In this document: one piece after another, positions 38,884 to 63,256 of the stretch
How the letters are laid out: every line of letters begins with the position of its first letter
How positions within the stretch are numbered: position 1 is the stretch's first letter
Assembly (NCBI RefSeq): GCF_011386835.1
Contig: NC_088791.1
Coordinates: forward strand, 88,722,001 to 88,786,000
Direction: 5' to 3'
From: Chrysemys picta bellii
Lineage: Eukaryota
DNA: 64,000 nucleotides
The notes under the pieces: model-generated
The model's database searches: none
The model's input: the letters and a program-made list of their open reading frames with translations, nothing else
What the model was told of the DNA's origin: nothing
Position numbers and translations under genes: made by a program

Positions 38884-41495
38884 TGCTGCCTGAGGGGGAA
38901 CAGACATGAAAAGGGTTCAGCCTGCCAAGCCAGAGAGTCCAACAAGCAGTTTATTTTTCTAGCTTCGTGGCAACAAAATAGTTAGGCTAGAGAAGGGCAG
39001 TTCTTTGCATGAGGTTGCGGCCGGGCACCAAAATCCTAAGGCAACCAGTTTTCCCAAAGTGGCACGCCATGGAGAAGACAGACCCAGATCAAGCCCAGAC
39101 ATCCAGCTCCATGACAGAAATGTAGGGAGGGGATGGGAGACCATAGACTTCCCAGGAGGGAAGGGTCAGCCCTCCCCCACCTGAGATCCTAGTGCCAGGA
39201 TGGGGGGATGCCCTTAACCCAGGCAACGTTCTAACTGCGGAAGAAAGGAATTTCTTCCTAGAGATGAAGTGCTTGGAGGTGGAAGAAAGGTGAAGCACTG
39301 GGAGGTGGAGGTGGAAGCGGAAGCGAAGCGCTTGGAGGCGGAAGCTGAGGCAAAGCTCTTGGAAGCGGAGGTGAAGCGCTTGAAGGCAGAAATGGAGCTA
39401 AAGCGCTTAGAGCTGGAAAAAGCTAAGCTGGGTCAACCAGGTAGCCCTAACAGTCATTCTCCAGATACTGGTCCCCATTCCAAGAAATTCCCCACATACA
39501 AGGTAGGCGATGATACAGAGGCCTTCTTAGAAAATTTTGAAAGGGCCTGCCTTGGGTACAGCCTCCCTCCAGACCAGTATATGGTGGAGCTGAGGCCACA
39601 ACTCAGTGAACCCTTAGCAGAATTGACAGCTCAAATGCCTAAAGAACACATGAACGAGTATGAACTTTTTAAACAAAAGGCCAGAATTAGGATGGGACTA
39701 ACACCTGAGCATGCCTGTCGGTGGTTCAGATCCCTAAGGTGGAAACCAGACGTGTCATTTTCCAGACATGCCTACCACATTGTAAAAAATTGGGATGCCT
39801 GGATATCAGGAGTAAATGTTAAGTGTCTGGAAGATCTGTCTATCCTAATACAAATGGAACAATTCTTAGAGGATGTTCCTGAGGAAATAGAAAGGAAGAT
39901 TGGAGCCAAATGGGTGGAGGTGGCAGGGAAGAAGAAAGCTAGTAGCAGTTGGTGCAGATACCAGAAGGGGCAACCTGAGACAATGCCCCACCATTAGAGT
40001 CATCCCAAGGCCCCACCTCACAAGGAGGAGCCCTCCACACAGCCAGGGAAACCCCAGATGCCCTCTCGTCCCACCACCCTACTCGCCAACCACCCACCTT
40101 ACCCCAGCCCACAATCAGCTGGGCAATTCTTCAAATGTAATGAGCTGGGGCATGTGAAGGCCAACTACCCCAAGAGCACCAGATGACTGCAATTCATCAC
40201 CCCGAGGTCCCAACGAGAGCCTTCAGACCCAGATGCTTCACAAATACCCCCAGAGCTAAGGGAAACTGTGAGTGTGGGAGGGAGGAAGATTACTGTATGG
40301 ACAGACACTGGAACACAGGTGTCAGCTATCCACCAATCCCTGGTGGACCCCAAATTCATCAACCCAGAGGCCCAAGTGATGGTGCAACCCCTTAAAGCCA
40401 ACTCTTTTAACTTGCCTACAGCCAGGTTGCCTGTCCAGTACAAGGGCTGGTCAGGAATATGGACTTTTGCAGTCTATAACGATTATCCCATTCATTCCCA
40501 TGCTGCTGGGAGAAGACTTAGCCAACCATGTGAGGCTTATAAAAAGGGTGGGGATGGTCATCCGCAGCCAGGCTAAACAGGCCTCCAAACCTAACCCCAT
40601 TTCTGAGTCTCCTACAAGAACCCAGTCTGTGTCCCCTGATACCATAGGCCCAGGAACTCAGCCAGAGGTTGTGAAAACAAACCCCAGACCAGAGTCTATG
40701 GCAGCGGTTGTAAATCCAGTTCCTGGGACCCAACCAGAACCAGACCAAGGATCGGAACTCATGGAGCAGTCAGCACCAGAGCCCATTCTTGCAACCACAC
40801 CAAAGCCAGGGGAGCCAGCACCAAGGGGCGCCACAGAGCCGGCACCTGCAGCAGCAGCTAAACCGGTGCAAGAAGCTCAACCGGAACCTGAAATGCAACC
40901 TAGTGCACCAGTAGAGAGTAGTTCACAATCGACGGAGACACCCCCATCACCTGCATCGCTTCCAGTGGGACCAAGCCCAAGTCCACAACCCAGCAAGGAA
41001 CTAATGTCTCCAGCATCAAGTGAGCAGTTCCAGGCAGAGCAGGAAGCAGATGAAAGTGTCAAGGGAGCTTGGCCAGAGCACAGAGCAACTCACTACCTCT
41101 CAGCTCTTCCAATAGGTCCAGGTTTGTTGTAGAAGGAGGACTTTTATACAAGGAAACTCTTTCTATTGGGCACAAGGAGAACTGGCATCCTCAGAGACAG
41201 TTGGTAGTTCCAACTAAGTATAGGGAAAAGCTCTTGAGCATAGCCCACGATCACCCTAGTGGCCATGCTGGGGTGAACAGGACCAAGGACTATTTGGGGA
41301 AGTCATTCCACTGGGAGGGAATGGAAAAGAACTTTTCTATCTATGTCCAGTCTTGTGAGGTGTGCGAGAGGGTGGAAAAGCCCCAAGACCAGGTCAAGGC
41401 CCCCCCATAATTGAGGTTACATTTCAGTGGGTAGCTGTGGATATTCTAGGTCTTTTCCCTAAGAAGACACCCAGAGGAAAGCTATACATACTGCC

Positions 41496-41943
41496 TGTGA
41501 TGCAACAGGGAGTGGGGAGTATTGACCTGGGAATGTTGCAGAGGAGTTTTACTGGGACTGTGTGTGGGATGGGAGACTTTCCAAGGGAAGATACCGAAGC
41601 ATGTAACATGAGAGCCCAGGAGAGGGGTTGGGGCCAGGTGACACCTTCTGCCCGGGAAAATGGACAAAGGCTGGAGGAGGAACCAGGGGGAGGGGGTTTG
41701 AGATGGCTGGAGGAGGTTTCAGTTTGGAGCTGGCTGGGGAAACGGAGGGAGCCCCAGGACTGGGGTCTAAGTCCCTGTCCCCCAGAAGGATTTGACTGTG
41801 GGGTCCTGGTTAAACCTACAAGCTTTGTTTGGGACTGTGTTACTGTCATCCAATAAACCTTCCATTTTACTGACTGTCTGAGAGTCACAGTGAATCAAAG
41901 GAAGTGGGGGTGCAGGGCCCTGATTCCCCCACACTCTGTGACA
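41496..41943 (+). mobile_element. Solo LTR inserted in the integrase gene, related to the LTR at 2901-3372
   Basis: TGTGAT...GTGACA with TSD CTG(C/A)C. Removing it restores YILTFMDFAT. Shared 3' end CTGTCATCCAA(A)TAAACCTTC...GGGGTGCAGGGCCCTGA. Confidence 0.9.
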
Positions 41944-42772
41944 CTGACCTTCATGGATTTTGCCACCCGATGTCTGGAAGCAGTAGCTCTAAGCAACATC
42001 AGGGCTAAAAGTGTGGGCCAGGCATTGGCAGACATTTTTGCCAGGGTAGGTTGGCCCTCAGACATCCTTATGGATTCGGGAACTAACTTTCTGAAAGGGA
42101 CCATGAAACATCTTTGGGAAGCTTATGGGGTGAACCACTTCGTTGCCACCCCTTCCAACCATCAAACAAATGGCCTAGTGGAGAGTTTTAATGGGAATTT
42201 GGGGGCCATGATATGTAAATTCATGAATGAGCACTCCAATGACTGGGACCTAGTGTTCCAGCAGTTGCTCTTTGCCTATAGGGCTTTACCACATCCCAGT
42301 TTGGGATTTTCACCCTTTGAACTCGTTTATGGCCACAAAGTTAAGGGGCCATTACAGCTGGTGAAGCAGCAATGGGAGGGGGTTACATCTTCTCCAGGAA
42401 CTAACGTTTTGGACTTTGTAACCAACCTGCAAAACACCTAGCTCTTGCTTGAGAAAACCTACAGGATGCTCAACAAGAGCAAAAGTCCTGGTATGATAAA
42501 CATACCAGAGAGCGTTCCTTCAGAGTAGGTGACCAAGTCATAGTCTTGAAAGCGCTCCAGGCCAATACGATGGAAGCATTGTGGGAGGGGCCATTTATGG
42601 TCCAAGAGCGCCTGGGAGCTTTTAATTACCTCATAGCGTTCCCAGACCCTACCCTAAAACCTAAAATATACCATGTTTATTCTCTAAAGCCCTTTTATTC
42701 CTGACAAATCAAGGTTCTCCATTTACAGCCCAGGAGAGAGATGACACTGAGTAGGCTGAAGAAGTCTACTAT

Positions 42773-43975
42773 TGTAGAACTGATGAATGAAATTGCTTTT
42801 AATTGTTCACTTTATAATGTAACTTCATAAGTACAGTTTTATGAATGAAATAACATCCATTCATAAAACCAGTTACCCCAATAACTGGCTAATTGACAAT
42901 TAAGATGCTTGTTAAGAGCCACAGTTGTTCAGCCTGCTGCCTTTGTAAATTTCACTATCAATCCAATTCCTGCTTAAATCACTGAAACTTGCACTGTTTC
43001 AGTATTGTAACTTCTGTTCACCATTCATTACACTTGCCTACATTGTAACTTCTGTTCACTGTTTGCCATATTGTAATTCAAACCCCATTTTAAAACGCTT
43101 ACTCCATTTTGTAAAAGCTGGCTCCAACCTTCATTTTTGCAAGCCCTGCTGTAATCTTATTAGTTTAGTTTAGATGTGTGAATGAGGTATGGATGGATGA
43201 TGGAATCAACCTCCAGCACCAGCCTGTCCTGATGAAATAGTGTTCAAACATCAACGGCTGAAGATGCAGACAAGAGCCCTAACAAAGTAAGAAGAGTCCA
43301 CCCTAAAAAGAACAAAGGTACAATAGAAGGAAGATCAGAGCCAGGTCCCAGGCTGAAAGTTACGCCTGCAATTGACTGGTGATCAATCACCAAACCCAGT
43401 AGGGTGACCAGATGTCCCGATTTTATAGGGACAGTCCAGATATTTGGGGCTTTTTCTTACATAAGTGCCTATTACCCCCCACTCTCTGTCCCGATTTTTC
43501 ACACTTGCTCTCTGGTCACCCTAAAACCCAGAGGCAGCGTGACACAGCAAGACCTATAGACTCTGGATTCAAACTAAAGCCTACAAAAAGCGTGGGTGAG
43601 ATGGAAGACTTTGGAGGGTAACATTCTGCTGCCAACATGGAAGGGCATCGGTGCATGCCAAACAGAGACCCAGCCCTTCCTTGTGCCCGGCTTTCCTGGC
43701 CAGTTAGCCGCCACAAGCTACGAACCCAAGCTGCAAAATCAAGCCATGAACTCAAGCTATGTTCAGGACTGGTAACTATGCAGCAGCTGCAGAACATCTG
43801 ATGGATGTGTGAATGTGTGTGTGTGTGGATGTGTGTGTATAGGTATCAGGTATAATGTGTGTGTATAAGGATTAAGATATTAGTTATTGGTCATAAATCA
43901 AATTGTTATCATAATAAATGTGGCATCTTTGTCTTGCTCCCTGAAAAGATCCTGTGTTGTTTTGTCTGTATAACA
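42773..43975 (+). mobile_element. Solo LTR (possibly ERV-type) between IN and RT
   Basis: TGTAGAAC...TATAACA with 4-bp TSD CT(A/G)T and AATAAA at ~43913. Confidence 0.75.
43400..43523. mobile_element. hAT-type MITE (TAGGGTGACCAG family), copy 3
   Basis: Perfect 8-bp TSD AAACCCAG and TIRs. Confidence 0.93.
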
Positions 43976-44938
43976 CTGTGAAGGAAAAAGCAACAGTGGT
44001 GTAGAAGAGGTGAGGCTTTCCATAACCTTTGGGTGTAAGCACTGACAGCAAATCCAGGAGCTGTGCACTAGCTTTGCGCCAGTGTTTTTAGCCACCCTGG
44101 GATGGACAGAACAGTCATACCACTCCACTGACACAGGTGATGCTCACCCAATTAGAGCCCAACCTTACCGGATGGCTCCTCAAGCCAAAACTGCAATAGA
44201 AAGGGAGATCAAGGACATGTTACAGATGGTTGTAATCCACCCCTCTGAGAATGCATGGGCATCTCCAGTGATTATGGTTCCCAAACCTGATGGGGAAATC
44301 CACTTTTGTATGGACTACCATAAGCTAAATGCTGTAACTTGCCCAGAAAACTATCCAGTGCTACACACAGATGAACTATTGGAGAAACTGAGATGTGCCC
44401 AGTTCATCTCCACCTTAGACTTTACTAAGGGGTACTGGCAAGTGCCACTAGATGACCCAGCCAAGGAAAGGACAGCCTTCATCACCCACGTAGGGCTGTA
44501 TGAATTTAATGTGCTCCCTTTCGGACTGTGAAATGCACCCGCCACCTTCCAGAGACTGGTTGATAATCTTCTGGCTGGATTAGGGGAATTTGTAGTCGCC
44601 TACCTAGACGATGTGGCCATATTCTCAGATTCATGGGCAGAACACCTGGACGACCTCCCAGCTGTCTTCCAGCGCATAAGGGACGCAGGATTAACCATTA
44701 AGGCCAAGAAATGTCAAATAGGCCTAAACAGGGTAATCTACCTTGGACACCAGGTGGGCAAGGAACTATCAACCCCTTACAGGCTAAAGTAAATGCTATC
44801 CAAAATTGGCCTGTCCATAAGTCAAAAAAGCAGGTCCAATACTTCTTGGGCTTGGCCAGGTATTACCGACGATTTGTACCACATTACAGGTGGTTCCATC
44901 TGCAGACTGCCCATGCTGCACTGAAGTGGCTTCACTCA

Positions 44939-45244
44939 GGGTATGTCTATACTTACCTCCAGGTTCAGCGGTAAGCAATCAATCGTCTGGGATCGATTTA
45001 TCGCGTCTTGTCTAGACGCGATAAATTGATCCCGGATCGATCCCAGAAGTGCTCACCGTCGACGACGGTACTCCTGCTCCACGAAAGGAGTAGGCGGAGT
45101 CAATGGGGGAGTCTGCCTGCCGCGTGTGGACCTTTGGTAAGTACCTTTAAGTTCGAACTAAGGTACTTCGACTTCAGCTACGTTATTCACGTAGCTGAAG
45201 TTGCATATCTTAGTTCGAACTGGGGGGTTAGTATGGACCAGCCC
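44939..45244. mobile_element. Harbinger-type MITE, copy 2, inside RNase H
   Basis: Reverse complement of 33049-33343, flanked by TCA/TTA. Confidence 0.9.
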
Positions 45245-45888
45245 TTAGTCAAAGAAAGTAACAAAAATCTTCTTCAGTGGAGCTTAGCTCTTCAGGACTT
45301 TGATTTTGAAATACAACACATTTCAGGAGCCTCTAACAAAATGGCTGATGCACTCTTCCAGGAAGGTTTCCCAGAATCAGATGGGTAAAAATCTCCCTGT
45401 ATTCTAAGTTGTAGTAGTCCTAAAATGTGGAAAATACTGTTTAGTTCTTCATGTAATTAGTAGTAAAATTAGAGGTGCATGTATCTTATTAACTCTGTTT
45501 CCTCAACCTCCAGGAAGAAATCCCAGGCGGTGTGGACCCTACCTAAACCAGGCTGGCCAGCACTGTCTGTGATTTGGGGTGTGTGCGATAAATGAAAGTG
45601 GGGGTAACTCCCTTTTATGGACACCCAGTCAGCCAGTTAACTATAAAATCCCTCTTAGTAGTTGTTCTCTACTTGCTTTTCCTGTAAAGGGTTAAAATGT
45701 CTCCTGGCATAGATAAAAGGAAGGGAGTGAGTACGTGACCAAAAGAGCCAATGGGAAGGCAAGAACTTTTTAAAATTGGAAAACAACTTCCCCTTGGTCT
45801 GTCTGTTGTTGTTCTCGGGGAGAAGCAGAGACAGGGCTGGAACTATGCTGTAAGAAGCTTGGGGCCAGTTAGGAAAAATCATCTAAAT

Positions 45889-52240: not shown

Positions 52241-53207
52241 TGAAAGGGTGCACACTTATTAAAAACAAAATACAATTGTTTTTGTTTACTCCTCCCCTCT
52301 CCCCCACTTGTCAGGCTCCAAATTGTGTCAGGCTATATTTTAAACATGTTTACAATCTGACCTGCCACTTGCTATCCGTTTGTTCAGTACCTAGCATTAT
52401 AGGGCCTTCGCCTTATTAAGGTATCTACGGGTCACCTCAAGGTAAAAGGGTGGAAATTATATGAATAACTAATAATTCTGGCAAATATTTATAAAAGTTT
52501 CCCAATAATTAGACCTCAGATATAGCAAATGTACCTTATATAACTGAGTTTCTACTGACAAGTTCCAGTCTACTGACCAGTTCTCCATGGGGAAAATCAA
52601 ATAGTATTCCAATATAAATTAAAATAAGCCTATTGTGAAACTGACAGAGGTGAACCACAGGGGATGTTTAAGTATTTATGATTAAATAGATATTTATTGT
52701 TCCTGCTGTTTGGTTGTATGATGGTCTTTATTTCTTAGCTGTTATTAGTAAACATTGAACCGTAAAACAGGTTTTTATATCGTTTACAAGTTCTGCAATT
52801 TAAAAAAGAATGTCCATCAGATGGCAGTAAAGGATAAGAAATGAGAAAGTGAAATACATTTCACAGCTTAACAGAACCCCTTCTGATTATTTTGATCTAT
52901 AGTTTTCAAAGATCTGCAAATTCTTAAATAATTTGTACAGTGTAGCCTTTGAGCTGACACCTACACGTATAGCACTGTCTTCTAAATACTGCACCCTGTT
53001 TTCATAAAAGCAATTCAGAAGCCCCTTCTCTACATTAAGTAAATAAAATCTTCCTATAGGTTTAGATGAATGAGTCTCTTTCCCTGGAATGGGAAAGGGG
53101 TCAGATTTTCTGAGCGATTAGCGATTTTCTCTGCAGACTTTCAAACAAAGTTACACAACTTCCTGTATGTACTGCAAAAGGCATAGTAGTAATTAAATTA
53201 TTTCCTG

Positions 53208-53556
53208 TGTTTGAAAAACCCGCGCAAGGATTGTCCAGTAACAACCCTCTTTTTTACCTCTTCAATGAGCTATCTGGACGCATCCCTTTGCTCGGTCGGA
53301 GGAATGCGGGGTGGTTTTGACTACTCGTTCCGTACAAAACTACGTGCCCGGGATTTTCCAATAGACTGTCAGATTCGTTACCCACTTGGAGACCTCTATT
53401 CTCGTACATCTGACAACAAATAACCCGTAAAGGAGAAGGTTGGATGTGAGGCTTGAGAGCTGTAAATACTGACTTCTGTTGCAAGTTATGCAGTGGGAAA
53501 ATGATCATTACGCATTAAATCTCAAATTTCCCATGTCATCTTCAGACAAAGTTATC
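53208..53556 (-). repeat. Inverted diverged copy of the module at 54967-55345
   Basis: CCCTTTGCTCGGTCGGAGGA, GGTGGTTTTGA and TACAAAACTA match the reverse complement of 55200-55262. The motif variant is at 53210-53225. Confidence 0.85.
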
Positions 53557-53802
53557 CCCCCCCCCCCGCAGTAAGGCACTTTTAAGTGCGTGTGTGAACG
53601 GAATGTAATTTACACATTTTGCCCAATTTAATCCACCGCTAGAAAAAAATGAGGGCGAAATCCTGTCCCCGCTGTCAGTTATTTTTGTTTGTTTGATTTT
53701 GTCACGTTGATTTTTGTAAGAGGGGGATTTCACTGTTTGGCGTACACACGATTCCTACCGGAACTTTTGGAGATAATCAAACCCTTTTTTGACTTTGTGG
53801 GT

Positions 53803-53818
53803 GGCTCTGAAAAGAGCC
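53803..53818 (-). terminator. Histone stem-loop of H2A
   Basis: GGCTCTTTTCAGAGCC-ACCCA. Confidence 0.95.
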
Positions 53819-53863
53819 GTTAAGTTAGTTTTAAATTCGAAGTGTTTATTTCTCACTTCAGCT

Positions 53864-54271
<408 letters not shown>

Positions 54272-55311
54272 CTAGCACCGTTTGCTCGGGAAAAGAAATG
54301 CAAAGTAAGCCAAGGGACACCCAGCAGCCGCCCTTATATTTCTTCCGTTTTCAGACTCAAACTATTTGTGATAGGCTGGCTGAAGACTTGCATTCTCTGA
54401 ACAGCCAATGGGGAAGCGGATCTAACTGTGACCATTGGTGAAGTGTAATATGCCGGTTGGGAATGTGGTGGGTTTTGCGTCTCCCCAAAAGAGACGCAAT
54501 AAAATAGAATTTAAAAAAAAGTAAGAAAAAAAAAAACGGGGGGTGGGAGGGGTCGGTACCATTTTCCCCTCACACTGTTATTGCGGAGCTGCAAAGAATA
54601 CGAGAGACTACCCTGATTTCAAGCTCATTGCATATCAAGGGAGTTTTGTGTTTACAGTTTAGAAATGTCTGCAATGGGTCTTGTACATTGGCCCTCAGTG
54701 ACATGGAACACTCATTGAAGGTGCTCGTGCTCCTAATTTAGTTTCTTTGAGGTAAACTTATCAATTAAATTAATTTTAAACAAAACCCTAATCTCTATCT
54801 TCGAGACTATCTTGCGGAGGTAATTAAACCAGGACATAAATAAATCAATAATTGGTCCATTTATCAAACAGTCAAAAAGACTGGCTAAAGTGAGTATTCC
54901 ATAGCAGCAGTGCATTCAGTTTACAGAAACACACAAGAGCATTTATGTAAATATCTAGTGGGTAGGAAATAATTTTGTCTGAAGACGACATGGGGGAATT
55001 GAGATGTAATGCATAACGATCATTCGCCCACAGGGTAACTTTTTACAGGAACAGTTAGTATTTATATATGCATTTCACGTCCTACACGCAACTTTCTTTT
55101 CCAGATAGTTATCAGATTTAGGAGAACAAAGGTTTCCAAATGACTAGTGCATCTGTTTGAAAGTCAAATAGAAAATGATTTTCTGAAAATCCCCAGGACC
55201 TAGTTTTGTACCGAACTAGTATTCAAAACCACCCCCTACTCCTCCGACCGAGCAAAGGGGTGCGTTTAGGTAGCTCCTTGAAGGGGTTAAAAGGACGGTT
55301 TGTCATTGTGC

Positions 55312-55545
55312 AATCCTTGCAGAGCGCGGGCTTTTCAAACTCACGCAAGTGTGTAATTGACTAATCCTTGCACAGCGCGGGCTTTTCAAACTCACGCAAG
55401 TTTGTAATTGACTAATCCTTGCACAGCGCGGGCTTTTCAAACTCACGCAAATCTGTAATTGACTAATCCTTGCACAGCGCGGGCTTTTCAAACTCACGCA
55501 AAACTAGTAATTGACTAATCCTTGCACAGCGCGGGCTTTTCAAAC
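55312..55545 (+). repeat. 51-bp tandem array (4.6 units), each with GCGCGG-GCTT-TTCAAA
   Basis: Units start at 55312, 55363, 55414, 55465 and 55517 (partial). Confidence 0.97.
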
Positions 55546-56255
55546 GCAGGAACTTGTTTTTAATCCGCGCCAAGCAACCAGATAGAGAACGGATTTTTGC
55601 TTCTAAAACTGCCATTTTCTCCCGCTTCCCTCCATCACTCTCCTCGCCGACCTGGGCCAATGCGCGTTTACGCGGTAATCTTATGGCTATTCTAGATCAG
55701 TCCCCTAACAGCATTTATACGAACAGAATGATTGGCTCCCTCACTAATATTACAAAATGCATCTTCCAAATTGAATACACTATCTAAAAATATTAGCATT
55801 ATTTTAATACCCCCGTAACGCTGCTTTCTAGAAAATGCGCTCGACATTCTTCCCTATAAACCCAACTTCCCGTGCCCCTGCGACTGATGGGGGAAGTGGC
55901 CAGAGACTGCATCTAACGACACCATCTACAGCAAAATGGTATTTTCCTGCAAGTGTTTGCTGCTAATCAAATAGCTTCAATACTTTACAACTATTACTTC
56001 GATATTCTAAACAAAATATGAATTAACACAAATGGTAGGAGCCCAGTTAAGAGTTTGCTCCGTGTTCCCTTGAGCAGTTTTATTTGCTGTTTTCAGAAGT
56101 TCATGATTCAACCCCGCACCTCTACATAAATGACCGCTGAAAGAGAGGTGCATCTGTACAGTCTAATAGAGTGACAAACTTGTTGCTAGATGAGAAGTTC
56201 TAATACAAAGTATTTTTCCCTCGTCCAACATCTTCTTTCTCGTGCTCATTATGAT

Positions 56256-56297
56256 ACAGCTCTTACTGTGAAAACGTGGGAGGCTCTGAAAAGAGCC
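56256..56297 (-). terminator. Histone stem-loop and HDE of third H4
   Basis: GGCTCTTTTCAGAGCC-TCCCA...TAAGAGCTG. Confidence 0.9.
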
Positions 56298-56329
56298 GTT
56301 GTTAATTATATATGGAGAGTAGAAAGACT

Positions 56330-56692
<363 letters not shown>

Positions 56693-56756: not shown

Positions 56757-57244
56757 AAAGAGGCGGGTCTATGCTAGTTGTCTTCCCCTTCCTTTCCCCA
56801 CTGACCTCTGTACAATGCTCATTCAGAAGAAAAGGGCGGGAGAGCAATCCCCTCCCCCCCCCCCCCCCCCCCGCTCGCCTTTGGCAGTAGACTGCTCCTT
56901 TTAAAATTCAGAAATATTTTGATTACAGATATATACATTTAGTTCTGTAGTATTTCCTGAGATTTTGTATTTATATACATTACTAAATCCTAACTAATTA
57001 TTGGAATCCCAGATTTTCCAGCAATACTGGTCACTTTAAACTCCTTAAAATAAGAGCCACATTCCAAGTGTGCTTTTTATTTGTCATTGTTGTATTTTCA
57101 CTTCGAGAGGATCTTCCAAAAAGTGCTTCACATCATGGCCTATTTCTTTTGAAAACACTCCTTAGATTTTGGGAGCAGATTGGATTTTAGCTGGAGGCTA
57201 AAATGGTGGATTTGGCTAACCTTTTCTCACAGGTCAATGAGAGC

Positions 57245-62583: not shown

Positions 62584-62645
62584 CCAGGCATCTGATCTGC
62601 TGCAGTTGTTTCTTTCTGTCCCAGGCCGTCAGATACTCAGCCAGT

Positions 62646-63256
62646 ATGTTGGAAACGGCACCTATTGCCTTTCCCCCGTCACTGCTCCTGGGGAGAAATC
62701 CCTCGCCAAAAAACCGAAGAAGGCAGAAGGAGGCTCCAAAGCTCACAAACCCTCGGGTCCCAGCGTGACCGAGCTGATCACCAAGGCTGTGTCCGCTTCC
62801 AAGGAGCGCAAAGGGCTCTCCTTGGCCGCTCTTAAGAAGGCTCTGGCCGCCGGCTGTATGTACGATGTAGAGAAAAGCAACAACCGCATCAAGCTGGGGC
62901 TCAAGAGCCTGGTGAGCAAGGGCACCTTGGTGCAGACTAAAGGCACCGGCGCATCGGGCTCCTTCAAAGTCAGCAAAAAGCCTGATGTGACCAAGGAGAA
63001 GGCGCCGAAGAAAAAGCCTAAGAAACCTGCCAGCGCCGCCAAGAAACCCAAAAAGGCTGCGGCCGTGAAAAAGAGCCCGAAAAAAGCCAAGAAAGCAGCA
63101 GCTGCCACAGCCAAGAAAGCGGCCAAGAGCCCCCAAAAGCTTACAGCCGCTAAGCCCACGAAAGTACCTAAGAGCCCGGGTAAAGCCAAAGCGGTGAAGG
63201 CCAAGTCTGTGAAGCCAACTAAACTTAAAGCAGCAAAGGCGGCGCCCAAGAAGTGA
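62646..63256 (+). pseudogene. H1: Histone H1 pseudogene (probable)
   Basis: ATG 62646 (MLETAP) shifts frame at the C5 run 62673-62677. One extra codon in the globular domain (GCMY vs GGY). Mutated TATA. Stem-loop mismatch at 63317 (GGCTCTTTTAAGAGGC). Confidence 0.82.

What the first reader, a model, noticed from the sequence alone, without database searches (positions are those of the whole stretch)
55312..55545. Tandem array of five CDE/CHR-geometry sites between H2A and H4
Seen: GCGCGG-GCTT-TTCAAA at 55324, 55375, 55426, 55477 and 55529. Single copies occur at 15451, 17766, 22277 and 53210, where the spacer changed to GTTT but kept 4 nt. Established: CDE/CHR elements have a GC-rich CDE 4 nt upstream of a CHR, LIN54 of MuvB binds TTYRAA (includes TTCAAA), and DREAM/MMB use these sites for cell-cycle control. 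Inference: an amplified multivalent E2F/MuvB platform acting on the histone locus, not attached to any gene start. I am not aware of such an array being described.
Basis: partly seen in the sequence, partly recalled or inferred. Interest (0 to 1): 0.78.

Follow-up and report, generated by a model that had tools for sequence, protein, structure and literature searches.

The report
Tandem relic of H3 promoter element
A short DNA word that normally sits upstream of histone H3 genes in turtles and birds has been copied five times head-to-tail in a gene-less spot of a turtle histone cluster; it is a real, inherited repeat, but most likely a left-over of a dead H3 promoter, not a proven cell-cycle control platform.

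Summary
Positions 55312-55545 are a 51-bp-period tandem repeat (4.6 units, 96% matches) with five exact copies of GCGCGGGCTTTTCAAA. The window has nine copies against 0.02 expected. One detail is wrong: only the copy at 53210 has the GTTT spacer.

The 16-mer is not an orphan invention. Its core, GCGGG-N-TTTTCAAA, is the H3-specific upstream promoter element of turtles and probable birds. It lies 126-154 bp before the ATG of 14 of 17 intact H3 genes, just ahead of two CCAAT boxes and a TATA box. It never sits at promoter distance from H4, H2A, H2B or H1.

Gene-less copies elsewhere are shown to be promoters of decayed H3 genes. The three gene-less sites in this window keep only a roughly 35-nt distal module.

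The array grew from one such module, bounded by AATCC direct repeats. An orthologous array with four motif copies exists in another turtle assembly.

The CDE/CHR resemblance is real in spacing. It fails on half-site orientation, on position (about -100, not at the start site) and on cell-cycle timing (S-phase genes). DREAM/E2F binding stays an untested candidate.

Another first-stage note records the same motif about 81 kb upstream in this genome.

The parts
55312..55545 (+). 51-bp-period tandem array, 4.6 units by TRF. A diverged fifth unit runs on to the closing AATCC at 55562.
   Evidence: TRF; sequence; AATCC at 55312, 55363, 55414, 55465, 55517 and 55562; unit alignment
55324..55339 (+). 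Motif copy 1, GCGCGGGCTTTTCAAA
55375..55390 (+). Motif copy 2
55426..55441 (+). Motif copy 3
55477..55492 (+). Motif copy 4
55529..55544 (+). Motif copy 5
54969..55363 (+). Right arm of an inverted paralogous pair flanking H2A. The array grows from its inner end.
   Evidence: Self-BLAST, 71% identity over about 400 bp to 53555-53187; alignment A1
53187..53555 (-). Left arm of the inverted pair, downstream of the H2A 3' end. It carries the single motif copy 53210-53225 (GTTT spacer).
22263..22299 (+). Gene-less distal module with an exact 16-mer at 22277-22292. It lies 586 bp beyond the H1 stop codon and points toward the H1 3' end.
   Evidence: The same position and orientation occur in other turtles and in probable birds, where it is an H3 pseudogene promoter.
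15451..15466 (+). The same 16-mer in a working H3 promoter. It is followed by a second TTCAAA (15469), CCAAT (15479, 15507), TATA (15530) and the ATG (15617).
17766..17781 (-). Mirror copy in the H3 promoter of the other palindrome arm
15617..16027 (+). Histone H3.2 gene with a 3' stem-loop at 16081-16127
53864..54253 (-). Solo histone H2A gene with no H2B partner. Its stem-loop is at 53778-53823.
56330..56641 (-). Histone H4 gene. Its stem-loop at 56256-56302 scores below the Rfam gathering threshold.

Best explanation
The feature is a minisatellite built from the distal module of a replication-dependent histone H3 promoter that has lost its gene.

**Shown**
- The core GCGGG-N-TTTTCAAA is an H3-subtype-specific upstream element in turtles and probable birds. 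It sits about 65-80 bp upstream of the TATA box, directly ahead of two CCAAT boxes.
- H3 genes in these clusters die often and leave promoter-bearing relics.
- The window's three gene-less sites share a roughly 35-nt module, CAATCC-TTGCA.A-GCGCGGGCTTTTCAAAC.
- The array's 51-bp unit is bounded by AATCC direct repeats.
- An orthologous array with one unit fewer exists in another turtle.

**Inferred**
- The array arose by replication slippage or unequal exchange between the AATCC repeats inside a relic module. Its copy number has drifted since.
- Each unit still offers a binding site for whatever factor reads the H3 element. E2F/DP with or without LIN54 is one candidate; the factor is not identified.
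- The array therefore acts at most as a passive cluster of sites within the histone locus, not as a dedicated regulator of a gene.
For: **The repeat**
- Array and motif counts.

**The motif as an H3 promoter element**
- The core occurs 30 times in 272.5 kb of sauropsid histone loci, against 0.045 by shuffling. It lies 126-154 bp upstream of 8 of 11 H3 ATGs and at no other histone promoter.
- A further 6 of 6 H3 genes carry it in new loci.
- Promoter landmarks.

**Gene-less copies as H3 relics**
- A profile of the bird gene-less copies aligns colinearly with real H3 genes from the motif into the coding region (E = 1e-9) and hits only H3 targets.
- L020 holds a truncated H3 pseudogene (E = 6e-15). 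L016 holds a promoter fused to an H3 3' end.

**The array locus**
- L017 has the orthologous array, with 3.6 units and 4 motifs.
- Only the roughly 35-nt module is shared by four diverged paralog types.
- AATCC bounds every unit.
- Downstream of the array there is no ORF, no H3 or H2B remnant, no Rfam match and no unusual single-strand fold.
- Between the two species the array is 88-96% identical, against 93% overall, so it shows no extra constraint.
Against: - No H3 coding remnant is detectable beside any of the window's three gene-less sites. Their origin as H3 promoter relics is inferred from the shared module and from better-preserved relics in other species.
- The module survives in paralogs that are otherwise unalignable.
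- Within both species' arrays the 16-mer shows 1 variant cell in 144, against 25 in about 298 elsewhere. Fisher p is about 8e-4, but the units are not independent.
- CpG observed/expected is 1.15 in the array, against 0.56 and 0.82 in the flanks.

The last three points hint at selection or protection from methylation. The sites may therefore be used rather than neutral.
Confidence: 0.65

Rival explanations
1. Each unit is a CDE/CHR-type composite site bound by E2F4-DP and LIN54 (DREAM/MuvB), and the five-fold array is a selected multivalent platform for cell-cycle control of the histone locus.
For: - The unit has a GC-rich block, 4 nt, then TTCAAA, which fits TTYRAA.
- Inverse TTCAAA CHRs bind DREAM and MMB in Ube2c and Plk4.
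- Human histone genes are DREAM-bound by ChIP yet lack recognised CHR or E2F sites, so an unrecognised site type is conceivable.
- The motif is conserved at H3 promoters and is invariant within the arrays.
Against: - The CHR half is flipped relative to the CDE compared with every validated tandem, and LIN54 binds in one orientation.
- The G/C block beside the Ube2c inverse CHR is not a CDE.
- Functional CHRs lie at the start site, whereas the H3 element is about -95 to -110, upstream of the CCAAT and TATA boxes.
- CHR genes peak in G2/M and histones in S phase.
- In pseudogene copies of probable birds the hexamer drifts to TTCCAA or TTCCGA.
- Array copy number differs between species, and its conservation equals that of the flanks.
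Confidence: 0.12
2. The array and the other gene-less modules are selected locus-level elements, such as an enhancer or a histone-locus-body recruitment site. They bind the unidentified H3-element factor, independently of DREAM.
For: - The roughly 35-nt module persists in paralogs that are otherwise unalignable.
- Both motif CpGs are retained in every copy, while a spacer CpG decays in L017 units.
- The array is kept in two species and appears in contigs of three coded organisms.
- A putative RNA or open-chromatin run holds low-depth contigs on both sides of the array.
Against: - Conservation is not above the flanks between the orthologs.
- Other blocks of the two arms are equally conserved.
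- Turtle DNA evolves slowly, so persistence is weak evidence.
- H3 promoter relics are common by-products of gene death.
Confidence: 0.18
3. The array is the upstream part of a promoter for an unannotated transcript running toward the H4 3' end.
For: - A CCAAT (55657) and an inverted CCAAT (55731) follow the array, and there is a TATAAA-like word near 55855.
- A run guessed to be RNA has contigs at 55643-56087.
Against: - There is no ORF of 90 aa or more, no Rfam family and no conserved structure.
- The first CCAAT is 113 bp from the last motif, against 12 bp in real H3 promoters.
- The RNA status of the run is a guess. Its depth is 2.5-4, and contigs also lie upstream of the array.
Confidence: 0.05

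Closest known systems
CDE/CHR tandem promoter elements bound by DREAM and MMB (Mueller et al. 2012, 2014; Marceau et al. 2016)
   Same: A GC-rich block, a 4-nt spacer and a TTYRAA hexamer, in a promoter that also has CCAAT boxes and belongs to a cell-cycle-regulated gene.
   Different: - The hexamer is flipped relative to the GC block.
- It sits about 100 bp upstream of the start site, ahead of the CCAAT and TATA boxes, rather than at the start of a TATA-less promoter.
- The genes are S-phase, not G2/M.
- It occurs in tandem and without a gene.
E2F/CLE tandem elements of S-phase genes (Mueller et al. 2016, PMC5716687)
   Same: S-phase target genes, with an E2F-like GC core followed after 4 nt by a CHR-related hexamer, within 200 bp of the start site in H3 promoters.
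   Different: - The E2F consensus TTSSCGC is matched at only 5 of 7 positions in turtles and 6 of 7 in probable birds.
- A CLE must by definition differ from the canonical CHR, whereas this hexamer is the canonical one inverted.
Subtype-specific histone promoter elements (H2B octamer/Oct-1, H4 Site II/HiNF-P, H1 box)
   Same: A short word confined to one histone subtype's promoters, at a fixed distance upstream of the CCAAT and TATA boxes, and conserved across orders.
   Different: - I found no description of this H3 word in the searchable literature.
- The binding factor is unknown.
- Gene-less and tandem copies exist.
Intergenic minisatellites formed by slippage between short direct repeats
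   Same: A 51-bp unit, head-to-tail copies, a flanking 5-nt direct repeat, and copy number differing between related species.
   Different: The unit carries a conserved promoter element, so each copy is a potential factor-binding site.

Membership tests
CDE/CHR tandem element | CHR hexamer fitting TTYRAA / TTTGAA | tested here: met
   TTCAAA is present in all nine copies. It fits TTYRAA and equals the inverse TTTGAA.
CDE/CHR tandem element | GC-rich CDE placed 4 nt upstream of the CHR, read on the TTTGAA strand | tested here: not met
   The 4-nt spacing is met (GCGCGG-GCTT-TTCAAA). Read on the TTTGAA strand, however, the GC block lies 3' of the hexamer (TTTGAA-AAGC-CCGCGC). LIN54 binds in one orientation. 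The papers read give no precedent, and the Ube2c G/C block beside an inverse CHR was non-functional.
CDE/CHR tandem element | [quoted passage not shown] | tested here: not met
   In H3 promoters the motif is at 15451-15466, with TATA at 15530 and ATG at 15617. That puts it about -95 to -110 from the inferred start, upstream of both CCAAT boxes. The array has no start site nearby.
CDE/CHR tandem element | Controls genes peaking in G2/M | tested here: not met
   The associated genes are replication-dependent H3 genes with 3' stem-loops. Such histone genes peak in S phase.
CDE/CHR tandem element | Bound by LIN54/MuvB (DREAM, MMB) | not testable with these tools
   This needs EMSA, DNA affinity purification or ChIP.
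E2F/CLE tandem element | Consensus E2F site TTSSCGC in either orientation | tested here: inconclusive
   The best match to GCGSSAA is 5 of 7 in turtles (GCGCGGG) and 6 of 7 in probable-bird H3 promoters (GCGGGAT).
E2F/CLE tandem element | CHR-like hexamer 4 nt downstream that differs from the canonical CHR | tested here: not met
   The hexamer is the canonical CHR inverted, whereas the definition requires a non-canonical word.
Sauropsid H3 distal promoter module (defined here) | Core GCGG[GA]-N-TTTTC-N-[AG]A | tested here: met
   All five array units and the four single copies match.
Sauropsid H3 distal promoter module (defined here) | Followed within about 12 nt by CCAAT, a second CCAAT, TATA and an H3 coding sequence | tested here: not met
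   The first CCAAT after the array is at 55657. An H3 gene profile and local alignments find no H3 remnant. The array is a derivative of the module, not a working H3 promoter.
Minisatellite | Head-to-tail units of 10-100 bp with copy-number change among relatives | tested here: met
   Period 51 with 4.6 units here; period 52 with 3.6 units in the ortholog L017; a one-unit gap in the pairwise alignment.

The most novel reading that the evidence does not exclude
The sauropsid H3 upstream element is a genuine E2F-DP plus LIN54 (DREAM/MuvB) composite site in a previously undescribed flipped arrangement. This would explain how DREAM reaches histone genes that lack recognised CHR or E2F sites. On this reading the gene-less and arrayed copies are retained as locus-level recruitment sites within the histone cluster.
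Probability: 0.1. Interest if true: 0.7.

Novelty: new member of a known kind. Interest (0 to 1): 0.33.

Why it matters
The array itself is a lineage-restricted minisatellite and is modest news.

The more useful result is the element it is made of. It is a short word specific to H3 promoters, conserved between turtles and probable birds, and I could not find it described. It leaves recognisable footprints wherever an H3 gene has died.

Published work notes that human histone genes are DREAM-bound but carry no recognised CHR or E2F site. A CDE/CHR-shaped word at H3 promoters is therefore a concrete sequence to test. The natural one-, four- and five-copy versions give a ready-made dosage series for such a test.

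Tried and rejected
- **H3 remnant beside the array and at 22277 and 53210.** Local alignment against shuffles gave z below 2.5. An H3 gene profile found nothing at E of 1 or less. No remnant was found.
- **Lost H2B partner of the solo H2A.** tblastn at E of 5 or less found none.
- **Structured RNA.** Rfam at gathering and at E of 1 or less found only histone stem-loops. The single-strand fold z-score is +0.9.
- **tRNA genes.** None.
- **Transposon origin of the arms.** Contig depth over the arms is single-copy in a DNA run.
- **Assembly artefact.** Rejected because of the orthologous array in another assembly and the read-derived contigs.
- **Copy-number polymorphism and transcription from public runs.** All runs were k-mer contigs that break inside the array, so no copy number was obtained. 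The RNA status of the one informative run is a guess.
- **Extra constraint on the array.** None is visible at 93% orthologous identity.
- **The 16-mer at H3 promoters of ten non-amniote loci.** Absent. Only loose TTTGAAA or TTTCAAA words lie near the CCAAT box in two fish-like loci.
- **Literature description of the H3 element.** Not found. Older subscription papers on chicken H3 genes are outside the library.

Full report
**1. Observation**

The window is a vertebrate replication-dependent histone cluster.
- H4 13997-14308 (+), H3 15617-16027 (+), H3 17205-17615 (-), H4 18924-19235 (-).
- H1 22878-23531 (-), a solo H2A 53864-54253 (-), H4 56330-56641 (-).
- Histone 3' stem-loops follow the genes.

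The H1 protein occurs only in assembly GCA_011386835.2, on a 360-Mb chromosome. Earlier scan notes call this genome the painted turtle.

Tandem Repeats Finder confirms the array at 55312-55545: period 51, 4.6 copies, 96% matches. The 16-mer GCGCGGGCTTTTCAAA occurs nine times, against 0.02 expected.

The statement that the single copies carry a GTTT spacer is true only for 53210.

**2. What the 16-mer is**

The copies at 15451 and 17766 each begin 166 bp upstream of an H3 ATG. On the + strand the order is:
- the motif (15451-15466);
- a second TTCAAA (15469);
- CCAAT (15479, 15507);
- TATA (15530);
- ATG (15617).

I fetched histone loci from other assemblies by exact H3.2, H2A and H2B protein matches. 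No tool verified this.

Results for the core GCGG[GA]-N-TTTTC-N-[AG]A:
- In 272.5 kb it occurs 30 times, against 0.045 by shuffling.
- It lies 126-154 bp upstream of 8 of 11 H3 ATGs, and at promoter distance from no H4, H2A, H2B or H1 gene.
- In nine further loci, 6 of 6 intact H3 genes have it.
- Probable-bird H3 promoters carry ACGCGGGATTTTCAAA.
- Ten non-amniote H3 loci lack it.

The word is therefore an H3-specific upstream promoter element conserved between turtles and probable birds.

**3. What the gene-less copies are**

In probable birds, a copy about 700 bp beyond the H1 stop points at the H1 3' end and is followed by two CCAAT boxes. A profile of five such sequences aligns colinearly with real H3 genes, from the motif through the CCAAT boxes into the coding region (E = 1e-9). 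It hits only H3 targets, not H4, H2A or H2B. These copies are ancient H3 pseudogenes.

In turtles, an H3 gene profile finds two clear relics:
- a truncated H3 pseudogene at the same H1-3' position in L020 (E = 6e-15);
- a promoter fused to an H3 3' end in L016.

H3 gene death that leaves a promoter relic is thus common in these clusters.

The window's own gene-less sites (22277, 53210 and the array) have no detectable H3 or H2B remnant. They share a module of about 35 nt, CAATCC-TTGCA.A-GCGCGGGCTTTTCAAAC. It is the only block conserved among four diverged paralog types. Loose ends of contigs show at least one more genomic copy of this module outside the window. Another first-stage note reports the same motif about 81 kb upstream.

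**4. Anatomy and origin of the array**

The solo H2A is flanked by an inverted pair of paralogous arms, 53187-53555 (-) and 54969-55363 (+), 71% identical. Each arm ends in the module. The left arm has one copy. The right arm has the array.

Every unit begins with AATCC (55312, 55363, 55414, 55465, 55517), and a sixth AATCC at 55562 closes a diverged last unit. A short direct repeat bracketing about 46 nt is the classic seed for slippage or unequal exchange. I infer that is how the array arose.

L017, another turtle assembly, has the orthologous layout: H4, array, H2A, single motif. Its array has 3.6 units of 52 bp and four motif copies. The array therefore predates the split of the two species and has since changed by one unit.

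Across the 4-kb orthologous interval identity is 93%. The array is 88-96% identical, no better than its flanks.

Three observations hint at constraint:
- Within the arrays of both species the 16-mer is almost invariant, with 1 variant cell in 144 against 25 in about 298 elsewhere. The units are not independent.
- Variation is concentrated in a roughly 12-nt patch.
- CpG observed/expected is 1.15 in the array, against 0.56 and 0.82 in the flanks.

None of these is decisive.

**5. Surroundings**

- There is no ORF of 90 aa or more between the array and H4.
- Rfam finds only histone stem-loops, there are no tRNAs, and the array has no unusual fold.
- Public runs hold the region in three coded organisms. 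The contigs break inside the array, so they give no copy number.
- One run guessed to be RNA has low-depth contigs on both sides of the array. This is ambiguous.

**6. Comparison with CDE/CHR**

- LIN54 recognises TTYRAA, and many DREAM promoters have a CDE 4 bp upstream of the CHR.
- Inverse TTCAAA CHRs work in Ube2c and Plk4, and 45% of CHRs are reversed relative to the gene.

Membership fails on three tested features.
- **Half-site orientation.** LIN54 binds TTTGAA in one orientation. Validated tandems read CDE-N4-TTTGAA. Here the GC block is 5' of TTCAAA, so the two halves are in a flipped relation. The G/C block beside the Ube2c inverse CHR was shown not to be a CDE.
- **Position.** Functional CHRs lie on or very near the start site. 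The H3 element lies about -95 to -110, upstream of the CCAAT and TATA boxes.
- **Timing.** CHR genes peak in G2/M, and histones peak in S phase.

The E2F/CLE class of S-phase genes is closer in biology. It needs a consensus E2F site and a non-canonical hexamer, and neither is clearly met.

Human histone genes are DREAM-bound by ChIP yet have no recognised CHR or E2F site.

In pseudogene copies of probable birds the hexamer has drifted to TTCGAA, TTCCAA or TTCCGA. That is what one expects once the gene is dead.

**7. Verdict**

The feature is a promoter-derived minisatellite in an H3 promoter relic (confidence 0.65). A selected locus-level role for the module is possible (0.18). The specific DREAM/MuvB platform model is possible but fails three family criteria (0.12). 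A hidden promoter is unlikely (0.05).

I did not take any fetched contig to be human.

Noticed in passing
L012:7900-8630, L013, L014:7790-8605, L015, L018 (minus strand): Probable birds keep an ancient H3 pseudogene (promoter module, two CCAAT boxes, decayed coding sequence with the first codons deleted) between the H1 3' end and the H2B 3' end. It is alignable across divergent species at about 78-86% identity.
   Followed up: partly
window 52804-53121 vs 12815-13147 and 20085-20390: The segment next to the left arm is about 69% identical to the outer ends of the H4-H3|H3-H4 palindrome. This suggests an older duplication unit shared by the two histone islands.
   Followed up: no
window 12840-20392: The H4-H3 | H3-H4 inverted duplication has identical H3 promoters and genes on both arms. 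Another first-stage note (s1-329916) already records it.
   Followed up: partly
window 39269-45388: A run of long ORFs reads like gag-pol fragments of a retroelement, broken into several frames. Together with other non-histone DNA it separates the H1 island from the H2A-H4 island by about 30 kb.
   Followed up: no
window 62606-63256 (+): An H1-like ORF has a normal globular and C-terminal part, but its N-terminus does not match the H1 at 22878-23531. It may be a pseudogene or a variant.
   Followed up: no
window about 21092-22915: In run X15 (guessed RNA) a 1823-nt contig at depth 14.7 spans the gene-less module at 22277 and reaches the H1 3' end. The stretch downstream of H1 may be transcribed or accessible in that sample.
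   Followed up: no
outside the window (contig loose ends at 55359/55391 and 55513/55545): At least one further genomic copy of the 33-nt module exists, flanked by ...CGGGCGGGAGAAG and CCTCCACCAATTTAG.... It is seen in all four runs laid.
   Followed up: no
window 53864-54600: This H2A has no divergent H2B partner. Its upstream region shares only a 45-bp block with the usual H2A-H2B intergenic promoter of other turtle loci.
   Followed up: partly
window 56849-56872: A 24-nt poly-C run lies about 200 bp upstream of the H4 start.
   Followed up: no
L002 and L007 (fish-like H3 loci), about 100-150 bp upstream of the ATG: TTTGAAA or TTTCAAA words, and in L002 a perfect GCGGGAAA E2F-type word, lie just upstream of the distal CCAAT box. 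The TTCAAA part of the H3 element may be older than amniotes.
   Followed up: no
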